From positions 28,278,862-28,342,861 of the forward strand of contig CM074511.1 of the NCBI GenBank assembly GCA_037379345.1: a stretch of DNA of 64,000 bases. Reading direction: 5' to 3'. The notes under the pieces are model-generated. The model saw only the letters and a list, made by a program, of their open reading frames with translations, was not told where the DNA came from and ran no database searches. The translations under genes were made by a program, and so were the position numbers. Shown here one piece after another: positions 33,143 to 34,759 of this stretch (positions are counted from its first letter, which is position 1; each line of letters opens with the position of its first letter). Origin of the DNA: Perna viridis. Lineage: Eukaryota.

Positions 33143-34759
33143 AGCATCAGATTTTTTGGCACCCAAGATGTCAGACGTGTTTTGTTACAGTGTTCTTAAT
33201 GTTTGTGGAATTAGTTAGATTATCAGTTTTGGAATGGATTTTCCAACCGAAATATAGTGATATGATGGATGATGGGCATAGTTACACAAGTAGTAAGTTT
33301 CAGTTGACAAAATACGTATTTATATACAATTGACATTATCGTGATAGCTTCTGCCGTTTTTGATTTGAGGGTCTTGTGGAAAATTTATTTATGAATTCAA
33401 TGTTGAGAGATTAATTTATGTGAAAATGGATTGTCTACCGAAAACATTAACTTCTTTGTTGAAAATTGTAAATGAACAATATACTGATTTTAGCTGGACA
33501 TGTACTGAGCAAAATGGAAGAATGAAAATATCTTTATTGTGGACAAATGGTGATAAATCAACGAAACGGAAATCTAATGCATCTAGAAAACGTGACCGGA
33601 AACGACTGAAGCAATTTGTAGAAAAGAAAAATTCAGAAAATAAAACATCTGAAAGCGAAGATGAATCGTTTATTGAAAGTGATACAGAAAGTGATATTCC
33701 ATCTGAACCCACCGATGCGTTAATGGACGTGATCGACAGTGTTCCGTGTAGCGCCTCATTGACGGTAAATACTAACAAAGGAAAGCAGTCAAGTGAAGAG
33801 AATAACCAATTGCGAACCGAGAGTGTGAAACATGTTAACGGAAATTTAAATGCCGCAGGGAAAATATGTATAAGTGAACATTCGAATACACAGAATATGT
33901 TAACTAAATCTCATGACGTTGTGAATACAGAAAATATTTCGAACACTGAAGAGAAATCAAAATCTCGACAGACACCAGTTCTAGATAAAATTGTTATCAA
34001 AACTTCGTTGAGTATGTGTAGCGCAACACTATTAACGTTGATCCCAATGATTAATTTAATCATGTCCTACTCATTGGGAAAGGAAGAGGACATTCATTAT
34101 TTCGGTCCAGGAACAAAGCGGTACACGTACGCTTTGCACAATATTGAAAACGATTTTGATGATGTTAGGAAAACTAAATACATGAATAGTGATATAGCTA
34201 GTGCAATTGAGAAAATGGAAATTGTTGCCCGCAGGAAAATAGAGACATGGTTAAACTAGGTCTGATTTGATTTTTAAAATGTATGATAAAGTTTGAATGT
34301 ATGGAAAATGTTTTGAAATATTTTTTTTTTACATTTTTTGCATGCCAATGTTTTAAAGCAGTCTGGAATGGATAGCCAGCCGGAATCTTTAATATTTGGA
34401 TATGAAATTGTGTAATGTATTTCAATTACCTTTTCACTTGTTTTCACATTTTACCTAAAATTAAAAAAAAAAAATAAAATAAAAATGTGCATGAATACAG
34501 TGAAAGTGTACAACTGTGATATCGCTTGTGCGTACATGATTGTGAATAAAAATATATTAAATGTATGAATATAAAAATTTTGTAGGTATTGCGAAAATGG
34601 ACAATTGTGGTGACTTTGTTTTCTATGCGTATGTAATTGACATATATGATATAACTAATCAATATGATAATAGTATGTCTATGAGAATATTAATAACAAT
34701 ATCTCTTTGATTTGTAAATGTTTTTCTGTTAATAAAATTTTATCAAGATAAAAAAAAAA
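33143..34759 (+). mobile_element. 1,617-bp non-autonomous protein-coding retroposon, copy 1
   Basis: 15-bp TSD, AATAAA and A10 tail, single ORF without RT/EN motifs, 3' end shared with Tx1-B. Confidence 0.9.
33426..34259 (+). CDS. Orphan 277-aa protein of the 1.6-kb element (ORF track opens at GTG 33420)
   Basis: 834-nt open frame in very AT-rich DNA; basic NLS-like KRKSNASRKRDRKRLK followed by an acidic tract. Confidence 0.8.
   Translation: MDCLPKTLTSLLKIVNEQYTDFSWTCTEQNGRMKISLLWTNGDKSTKRKSNASRKRDRKRLKQFVEKKNSENKTSESEDESFIESDTESDIPSEPTDALMDVIDSVPCSASLTVNTNKGKQSSEENNQLRTESVKHVNGNLNAAGKICISEHSNTQNMLTKSHDVVNTENISNTEEKSKSRQTPVLDKIVIKTSLSMCSATLLTLIPMINLIMSYSLGKEEDIHYFGPGTKRYTYALHNIENDFDDVRKTKYMNSDIASAIEKMEIVARRKIETWLN

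What the first reader, a model, noticed from the sequence alone, without database searches (positions are those of the whole stretch)
34711..34759. The 1.6-kb element shares its 3' terminus with Tx1-B, pointing to its helper
Seen: AATAAAATTTTATCAAGA (18 nt) is identical just before the poly(A) in the small element (34731..34748) and in Tx1-B (61137..61154). The 20 nt before it match at 15 positions (TTTGTAAATGTTTTTCTGTT vs TTTATGAATGTATTTATGTG). A hairpin precedes this block in Tx1-B (ATTGGG-AGACTAG-CCCAAT), with a weaker one in the small element (GAGAATATT...AATATCTC). Tx1-A has a different tail. Known: stringent LINE/SINE pairs share 3' tails that the LINE RT recognises. Inference: a Tx1-B-type ORF2 mobilises the element, so helper and parasite sit in the same array.
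Basis: partly seen in the sequence, partly recalled or inferred. Interest (0 to 1): 0.82.

Follow-up and report, generated by a model that had tools for sequence, protein, structure and literature searches.

The report
Shared LINE tail marks a parasite element
A 1.6-kb retroposon with no reverse transcriptase ends in the same ~50-base tail as a group of L1/Tx1-like LINEs and inserts at the same spot inside tRNA and 5S genes, so it almost certainly borrows their machinery, but Tx1-B is only one of several possible helpers.

Summary
The 18-mer AATAAAATTTTATCAAGA lies just before the poly(A) of all three window copies of the 1.6-kb element and of Tx1-B. The 20 nt before it match at 15 positions (P about 7e-5 in fixed register). 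Tx1-A has an unrelated tail.

Genome-wide the 18-mer occurs 116 times, against about 0.6 expected. Of 100 sites examined, 96 are 3' ends of retroposons followed by poly(A) and the 3' part of a tRNA or 5S gene:
- 47 belong to a LINE family I call C.
- 36 belong to the small element.
- 10 belong to Tx1-B.
- 3 belong to D or E types.

One-mismatch versions of the 18-mer end two further LINE families (B2, D2).

The small element is a young mobile family with at least 40 copies, about 1.3% diverged. It shows median 15-bp target duplications, 5'-truncated copies and more than 20 different tRNA targets plus 5S. Insertion is always at cloverleaf position 21/22, the same site the LINEs use. Its similarity to the LINEs is limited to the last ~52 nt.

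The helper inference is therefore supported for the LINE group, not for Tx1-B specifically. The D-type tail is the closest match, C is the most abundant, and C shares the T that follows the 18-mer. The small element's "weak hairpin" folds no better than shuffled sequence. The three window copies are one insertion duplicated in tandem. Other first-stage notes of this scan already flagged the element and the shared tRNA site.

The parts
33143..34759 (+). Small non-autonomous element, copy 1. Flanked by a 15-bp target duplication in tRNA-Pro(TGG) at 33128-33142 and 34760-34774. Its first 16 nt differ from the family's usual 5' end.
33426..34259 (+). 277-aa ORF of the small element. No Pfam family, and no similarity to ORF1 of Tx1-A or Tx1-B.
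34697..34749 (+). Shared 3' tail of the small element: 34 nt similar to LINE tails, the invariant 18-mer (34731-34748) with its AATAAA signal, and a terminal T.
34750..34759 (+). Poly(A) of copy 1 (10 A)
36537..38153 (+). Small element, copy 2. It is a tandem duplicate of copy 1: the 3394-bp units are 99.91% identical.
39931..41544 (+). Small element, copy 3, a tandem duplicate. About 46 bp of the tRNA-Pro remnant downstream of it is deleted.
55319..61163 (+). Tx1-B, a full-length LINE. ORF1 55579-57123, ORF2 57126-61028 (endonuclease + reverse transcriptase + zf-RVT), 126-nt 3' UTR. Lies in a tRNA-Pro gene with a 20-bp target duplication that has one mismatch.
61087..61115 (+). Tx1-B tail hairpin with an 11-bp stem. 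Its sequence is conserved in the B, B2, C, D, D2 and E tails.
61117..61155 (+). Tx1-B terminal block: 20 nt (15/20 to the small element), the 18-mer at 61137-61154, then G. Poly(A) is at 61156-61163.
31881..31910 (+). 3' end of the Tx1-A unit, with a different tail (...AATAAATGAT + A8), inserted at the same tRNA-Pro position.

Best explanation
The 1.6-kb element is a non-autonomous, poly(A)-ended retroposon family. It carries the last ~52 nt of the 3' UTR of a group of related LINEs that insert inside RNA polymerase III genes (families B, B2, C, D and D2; L1/Tx1-like ORF2).

Proposed mechanism. The element is transcribed as a discrete RNA. This is inferred to be by RNA polymerase II, from its AATAAA signal 12 nt before the poly(A), the absence of a polymerase III head, and the extra G residues at its 5' junctions. 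The terminal tag lets a LINE ORF2 protein of this group take the RNA as its template. The protein then nicks the bottom strand of a tRNA gene just after the D-loop (position 21/22), or of a 5S gene at a fixed site, and reverse-transcribes from the poly(A) end. The top strand is cut about 15 bp downstream, which gives the target duplication.

Shown here: the shared tail, the identical target site and target spectrum, the target duplications, the 5' truncations, the young age and the lack of a reverse transcriptase.

Inferred: that the tail is what the reverse transcriptase recognises, and which family supplies the protein. The helper is most likely C or D rather than B. In the window itself the three copies record a single insertion that was then duplicated in tandem with its 3394-bp array unit.
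For: - Tail is a retroposon hallmark. 116 genomic copies of the 18-mer against about 0.6 expected and 0 for the reversed control. 96 of 100 examined are retroposon ends followed by poly(A) and a tRNA or 5S 3' part.
- Constraint on the tail. B, C and D are only 71-75% identical over their last 1.5 kb. In their 3-way alignment (60% invariant columns overall) the longest invariant run of 1551 columns is the terminal 22 nt, while the proximal 3' UTR is 17-23% invariant.
- The small element is mobile. At least 40 scored copies of 75 candidates on many chromosomes, 96-100% identical, including 5'-truncated copies. 22 distinct flanks. Targets include many tRNA species and 5S, shared with B and C. Target duplications have a median of 15 bp and always start after the D-loop.
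- It is non-autonomous. The only ORF is 277 aa with no Pfam hit.
- Similarity is limited to the tail. blastn against Tx1-B hits only the last ~50 nt plus flank. There is no 5' similarity to four LINE 5' ends. No ORF1 similarity.
- Helper choice. D 27/33 (z 5.9), with C and E next and B weakest. Terminal T in 36/36 small and 46/47 C copies against G in 9/10 B. Copy divergence is 1.3% for small, 1.5% for C and 0.6% for B. Open ORF2 frames exist for B, for the ~90%-identical family that carries the B2 tail where one copy could be read, and for the C-terminal part of C.
- LINEs with other tails use the same tRNA site, so the tail and not the target ties the element to this group.
Against:
- The 18-mer contains AATAAA at the usual distance from the poly(A) site, so part of its conservation could serve polyadenylation rather than recognition by the reverse transcriptase.
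- The strongly conserved LINE hairpin is absent from the small element. If that hairpin is the recognition element, the small element lacks it.
A shared 5' region or ORF1 with those families is therefore not excluded.
- Only 36 of 4002 ORF2 candidates were scored, so the LINE census is incomplete.
Confidence: 0.8

Rival explanations
1. One reading: Tx1-B itself (its ORF2) is the helper of the small element.
For: The 18-mer is exact and 15/20 of the preceding bases match. Tx1-B has fully open ORF1 and ORF2 in the window and a second fully open ORF2 copy elsewhere. B copies are very young, 0.6% diverged. B shares target tRNA species with the small element.
Against: B is the least similar of the tail types upstream of the 18-mer. 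It ends in ...AAGAG(A)n where the small element and C end in ...AAGAT(A)n. It makes up only 10 of 100 exact-tail sites, against 47 for C.
Confidence: 0.15
2. Relaxed, L1-like mobilisation. The LINE proteins take any polyadenylated RNA. The shared tail would then be only a leftover of common origin or a polyadenylation cassette, and would not be a recognition signal.
For: ORF2 is most similar to human L1 ORF2p, and L1 recognises poly(A). The 18-mer holds AATAAA 12 nt before the poly(A). The small element lacks the conserved LINE hairpin.
Against: The 12 nt after AATAAA are as invariant as the hexamer across LINE families that are 25-29% diverged. No tail-less retrocopies were seen at tRNA sites in the loci sampled. 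The target DNA 3' end left by the nick is not T-rich, so it cannot pair with poly(A) as in L1; this last step is inference.
Confidence: 0.12
3. The element is an internally deleted or ORF1-only derivative of one of the LINE families that could not be read in full (C or D). It would then be comparable to HAL1 or to short internally deleted elements (SIDEs), and would share more than the tail.
For: Weak extra similarity to D further upstream (z 2.9, 6 of 500 shuffles). Full-length C and D copies were not available.
Against: No 5' similarity to four sampled LINE 5' ends, including two whose ORF1 is about 65% identical to that of B. No protein similarity of the 277-aa ORF to any LINE ORF1 in the window or in 130 loci.
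Confidence: 0.1
4. The copies spread by segmental or tandem duplication of tRNA arrays, without retrotransposition, so no helper is needed.
For: The three window copies are exactly this: 3394-bp units 99.91% identical with the same odd 5' end. Several other loci share flanks, giving 36 copies but 22 distinct flanks.
Against: 22 distinct flanks in different tRNA species and in 5S on many chromosomes. Each has its own target duplication, poly(A) length and 5' extra bases, and some copies are 5'-truncated.
Confidence: 0.02

Closest known systems
Stringent-type SINE/LINE pairs (3' tail shared between a SINE and its partner LINE; Kajikawa and Okada 2002, as cited in PMC4494074 and PMC5786205)
   Same: A non-autonomous element ends in the same short 3' sequence as its LINE partner. 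It has the same insertion signature and 5'-truncated copies, and no reverse transcriptase of its own.
   Different: It has no RNA polymerase III head; Rfam finds only the flanking tRNA genes. It is 1.6 kb long, carries an intact 277-aa ORF, and has an AATAAA signal and a poly(A). The tag is shared with several LINE families, not one.
SINEU / Tx1-Mar in crocodilians (PMC4494074)
   Same: Non-autonomous elements show the same target preference as a group of target-specific Tx1-clade LINEs and have poly(A) tails.
   Different: SINEU elements have snRNA-derived heads, are short, and insert into a DNA transposon. This element codes for a protein and its targets are tRNA and 5S genes.
HAL1 (half-L1), an ORF1-only non-autonomous derivative of L1 (PMC5753468)
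   Same: A protein-coding, reverse-transcriptase-less element that depends on an L1-type LINE.
   Different: The HAL1 ORF is the L1 ORF1. This ORF shows no similarity to ORF1 of the LINEs sampled, and the 5' region is unrelated.
Target-specific Tx1-clade LINEs Mutsu (5S rRNA genes), Dewa (spacer of tRNA-Leu) and Keno (U2) (Kojima and Fujiwara 2004, as cited in PMC3706591 and PMC4494074)
   Same: The helper LINEs here are L1/Tx1-type elements with an apurinic-like endonuclease that insert at fixed sites in multicopy small-RNA genes.
   Different: These LINEs insert inside the coding part of many different tRNA species at one cloverleaf position, and also in 5S genes. They are not tied to one gene or spacer. 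I found no description of such a lineage in the held library, but Repbase could not be searched.

Membership tests
LINE-dependent non-autonomous retroposon with a shared 3' tail | 3' terminal sequence shared with a LINE present in the same genome | tested here: met
   18/18 plus 15-16/20, and up to 27/33 upstream. The 18-mer ends families B, C and D.
LINE-dependent non-autonomous retroposon with a shared 3' tail | Same insertion signature as the LINE (site, orientation, target duplication, poly(A), 5' truncation) | tested here: met
LINE-dependent non-autonomous retroposon with a shared 3' tail | No reverse transcriptase or endonuclease of its own | tested here: met
   A single 277-aa ORF with no Pfam family
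LINE-dependent non-autonomous retroposon with a shared 3' tail | Mobilised in trans by the LINE protein, dependent on the tail | not testable with these tools
   Needs a retrotransposition assay
SINE in the strict sense | 5' head derived from tRNA, 5S, 7SL or snRNA with an internal polymerase III promoter | tested here: not met
   No Rfam family inside 33143-34759. The 5' end is not tRNA-like, and T runs lie within the body.
HAL1-like / internally deleted LINE derivative (SIDE) | ORF homologous to the helper's ORF1, or 5' end shared with the LINE | tested here: not met
   Full-length C and D were not available.
L1/Tx1-type LINE (Tx1-B as helper candidate) | ORF2 with an apurinic-like endonuclease, a reverse transcriptase and a C-terminal zinc-binding region | tested here: met
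   Pfam Exo_endo_phos and RVT_1 above their cut-offs, zf-RVT below its cut-off. Best solved relative is human L1 ORF2p, E 4e-81.
L1/Tx1-type LINE (Tx1-B as helper candidate) | Placement inside the Tx1 clade in a reverse-transcriptase tree | not tested
No reference sequences were at hand.

The most novel reading that the evidence does not exclude
The element is a new kind of LINE parasite. It would be a protein-coding unit transcribed by RNA polymerase II, with an unrelated body and an orphan ORF kept intact, that has captured only a ~52-nt terminal tag. That tag would be read by a whole group of LINEs which aim at a structural position common to all tRNA genes and at 5S genes. Its protein might replace or compete with the LINE ORF1 protein.
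Probability: 0.25. Interest if true: 0.7.

Novelty: new variant of a known kind. Interest (0 to 1): 0.5.

Why it matters
Tail sharing between a LINE and its dependent element is a textbook pattern, so the inference itself is not new. The setting is unusual in three ways:
- The tag is the most conserved stretch of several LINE families that insert at one cloverleaf position of many tRNA genes and in 5S genes.
- The dependent element is long and young.
- It carries an intact orphan ORF instead of a polymerase III head.

This gives a compact natural system for asking what a site-specific L1/Tx1-type reverse transcriptase recognises in its RNA: a 22-nt invariant end, with or without the hairpin. 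Several helper candidates and an in-genome negative control (the Tx1-A tail) are available.

Tried and rejected
One local pairwise comparison inside a script (units 33100-36493 vs 36494-39887) did include them.
- The look-up of sequencing runs listed only runs guessed to be RNA. Logan contigs of 1156-1607 nt hold the element; three of the four start at or within a few nt of its usual 5' end, and the two longest end in poly(A). These could be transcripts or collapsed repeats, so I do not count them as evidence.
- The protein-atlas search was busy twice.
- The AlphaFold model of the 277-aa ORF had a mean pLDDT of 39 and was not used.
- The search for homologous proteins found only the protein itself.
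- Similarity between the small element and LINE tails beyond -34 nt is marginal.
- The LINE hairpin shows no compensatory changes, so its structure is supported only by energy and sequence conservation.
- Codon-position counts in the ORF (12/12/12, pN/pS 0.57) neither show nor exclude selection.
- Tx1-clade placement was not tested by a tree.

Full report
**Setting.** The window is a tRNA array with repeating tRNA-Pro(TGG), tRNA-Val(CAC) and tRNA-Pro(AGG) genes, 68 tRNA genes in all. It belongs to a 723-Mb animal assembly. From 24 kb onwards several retroelements interrupt the array:
- Tx1-A: ORF2 at 26807-30658, outer 3' end at 31910.
- Three copies of a 1.6-kb element: 33143-34759, 36537-38153 and 39931-41544.
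- A gypsy-type LTR element at about 42019-53509.
- Tx1-B: 55319-61163.

Both Tx1 ORF2 proteins have an endonuclease and a reverse transcriptase domain above the Pfam cut-offs, plus a weaker zf-RVT match below its cut-off. They are 44% identical to each other. The best solved relative of the Tx1-B ORF2 is human L1 ORF2p, E 4e-81.

**Check of the observation.** The 18-mer AATAAAATTTTATCAAGA is exact at 34731, 38125, 41516 and 61137. In each case it lies one base before the poly(A). The preceding 20 nt match at 15 positions. With the register fixed by the 18-mer this has P = 7e-5. As a free local alignment it does not stand out. The Tx1-B hairpin is an 11-bp stem at 61087-61115 (z -1.9). The small element's tail folds no better than shuffled sequence (z -0.02). 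The Tx1-A tail is different.

**Is the 18-mer common at unrelated 3' ends?** No. It occurs 116 times in the genome, against 0.6 expected from composition and 0 for the reversed control. I read 100 of these sites:
- 47 are ends of a LINE family that I call C.
- 36 are ends of the small element.
- 10 are ends of Tx1-B.
- 2 are ends of a family D, and 1 of another element, E.
- 2 are degraded or nested LINE tails.
- Only 2 are unrelated sites with no poly(A).

Scanning for the tail hairpin also found two tail variants with one mismatch in the 18-mer. One is B2 (...ATCAAAAT). At the single copy where both could be read, this tail follows an ORF2 of the family that is about 90% identical to Tx1-B and has many open 1302-aa frames. 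The other is D2 (AATAAAC...).

**Evidence of constraint on the tail.** B, C and D are only 71-75% identical over their last 1.5 kb. C is 70% identical to B in the C-terminal part of ORF2. In the 3-way alignment, 60% of columns are invariant overall. The longest invariant run is the terminal 22 nt, while the proximal 3' UTR is only 17-23% invariant. The hairpin sequence is also conserved in all the LINE tails, but it shows no compensatory changes.

**What the small element is.** A DNA search found 75 candidates. All 40 that were scored are copies at 96-100% identity on many chromosomes, and three of them are 5'-truncated. Most start with a few extra G, A or T bases followed by GAGGAGTCGAAC. The window copies have a different first 16 nt.

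Each independent copy sits in a tRNA gene in the sense orientation. Target duplications have a median of 15 bp (range 6-25). They always begin right after the D-loop, at position 21/22. One copy lies in a 5S gene (L003). The targets cover many tRNA species and overlap those of B and C.

The element has one ORF of 277 aa, with these properties:
- It has no Pfam family.
- It has no similarity to ORF1 of Tx1-A or Tx1-B, nor to anything else in the window or in 130 loci.
- It has no relative in the large protein collection apart from itself.
- It is intact in 20 of 21 distinct copies, but the copies are too young for a clear signal of selection.

DNA similarity to Tx1-B is confined to the last ~50 nt plus the tRNA flank. 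The 5' 300 nt resemble none of four sampled LINE 5' ends. The element is therefore neither a strict SINE (it has no polymerase III head) nor a HAL1-like or internally deleted LINE, as far as the available LINE copies show.

**Copies in the window.** The 3394-bp units that hold copies 1 and 2 differ at 3 positions and have no gaps. All three copies share the same unusual 5' end and the same target duplication. The window therefore records one insertion followed by tandem duplication of the array unit, not three insertion events.

**Which helper?** Tx1-A-type and other tails (...AATAAAGAT plus poly(A)) are found at the very same tRNA position. The target site therefore does not identify the helper, but the tail does point to the B/C/D group. 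Within that group:
- In the 34 nt before the 18-mer the small element matches D best (27/33, z 5.9, 0 of 300 shuffles). E, C and D2 come next, and B is weakest.
- The base between the 18-mer and the poly(A) is T in 36/36 small copies and 46/47 C copies, but G in 9/10 B copies.
- C is the most frequent exact-tail family.
- Copy divergence is 1.3% for the small element, 1.5% for C and 0.6% for B.

Open ORF2 frames exist for B and for the ~90%-identical family. For C, the C-terminal part is open in 7 of 11 copies. I conclude that the helper is a LINE of this group, and that Tx1-B is a possible but not a favoured candidate.

**Mechanism.** Shown here: a common terminal tag, a common nick site, a second nick about 15 bp downstream, variable poly(A) length, 5' truncation, and extra 5' bases. 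Inferred:
- Recognition of the tag by the ORF2 protein.
- Transcription by RNA polymerase II.
- A need for protein-RNA recognition. The target DNA 3' end left by the nick (for example ...GAATC in tRNA-Pro) cannot pair with poly(A), unlike the T-rich primer used by L1.

A competing reason for the conservation of the 18-mer is polyadenylation, since it holds AATAAA 12 nt before the poly(A) site. That explains the hexamer. It does not readily explain the equally invariant 12 nt that follow.

**Comparison with what is known.** Shared 3' tails between SINEs and their partner LINEs, and the target preference of Tx1-clade LINEs, are established (PMC4494074, PMC5786205). Mutsu (5S genes) and Dewa (spacer of tRNA-Leu) are known Tx1-clade elements (PMC3706591). 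HAL1 is an ORF1-only L1 derivative (PMC5753468). In the held library I found no description of LINEs that insert inside many tRNA species at one position, or of a protein-coding partner of such LINEs. Repbase could not be searched, so I rate the finding a new variant of a known kind.

**Limits.** One local script comparison did include them. The structure model of the ORF was of too low confidence to use.

Noticed in passing
L001-L130 (genome-wide); window 33128-33142, 34760-34774, 55299-55318, 61164-61183: All tail-bearing elements (B, C, D and the small element), and LINEs with other tails, insert in the sense orientation at one cloverleaf position, just after the D-loop at nt 21/22. This holds across more than 20 different tRNA species. 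They also insert at one site of 5S genes, before CCGGTTCTCG at about +28. The flanking sequences differ between targets. This suggests recognition of a shared structure or of the polymerase III complex rather than of a sequence.
   Followed up: partly
L052:257-330; L117; L049, L056, L118, L015, L016: Two tail variants have one mismatch in the 18-mer. B2 (...TTTTATCAAAAT) follows, in the one copy that could be read, an ORF2 of the family that is about 90% identical to Tx1-B and has many open 1302-aa frames. D2 reads AATAAACTTTTATCAAGA.
   Followed up: partly
L028:1056-1530: Another element (E) has an unrelated, more G+C-rich body joined to the last 47 nt of the D-type tail, hairpin included. 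A second copy of that body lies inverted in the same locus (85% identical) without that tail. It may be a second non-autonomous partner.
   Followed up: partly
L013 and L088 (G000:C2:3193975, G000:C5:47118036): These are the only two 18-mer sites with no poly(A) or tRNA. They share similar upstream bases (...GTATGAAA..TGT), so they are probably two copies of some other repeat or gene 3' region.
   Followed up: no
window 58665-58682: A two-mismatch version of the 18-mer lies inside the Tx1-B ORF2 coding region. It is probably chance: 0.07 matches are expected per window at up to 2 mismatches.
   Followed up: no
window 41545-41556: After the third small-element copy, about 46 bp of the tRNA-Pro 3' remnant is deleted. 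The flank jumps from GATTCTC to the spacer that follows the gene.
   Followed up: partly
window 55299-55318 vs 61164-61183: The two copies of the Tx1-B target duplication differ at the first anticodon base. The 5' copy reads TGG and the 3' copy reads AGG.
   Followed up: no
window 42019-53509: A gypsy-type LTR element encodes gag, protease, reverse transcriptase, RNase H, integrase and a chromodomain. Downstream lies an ORF with a baculovirus F-like match, in the position where an env gene would lie. The element has TG...CA ends and a 4-bp target duplication (TAAG). It sits 6 nt upstream of a tRNA-Pro(AGG) gene, which recalls Ty3-like targeting of polymerase III start sites. I observed it only.
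   Followed up: partly
window 25208-25323 and 31600-31706: A direct repeat of about 110 bp flanks the Tx1-A coding part. The 5' junction of the whole unit lies in a tRNA-Val gene (24250), while its 3' end lies in tRNA-Pro(AGG).
   Followed up: no
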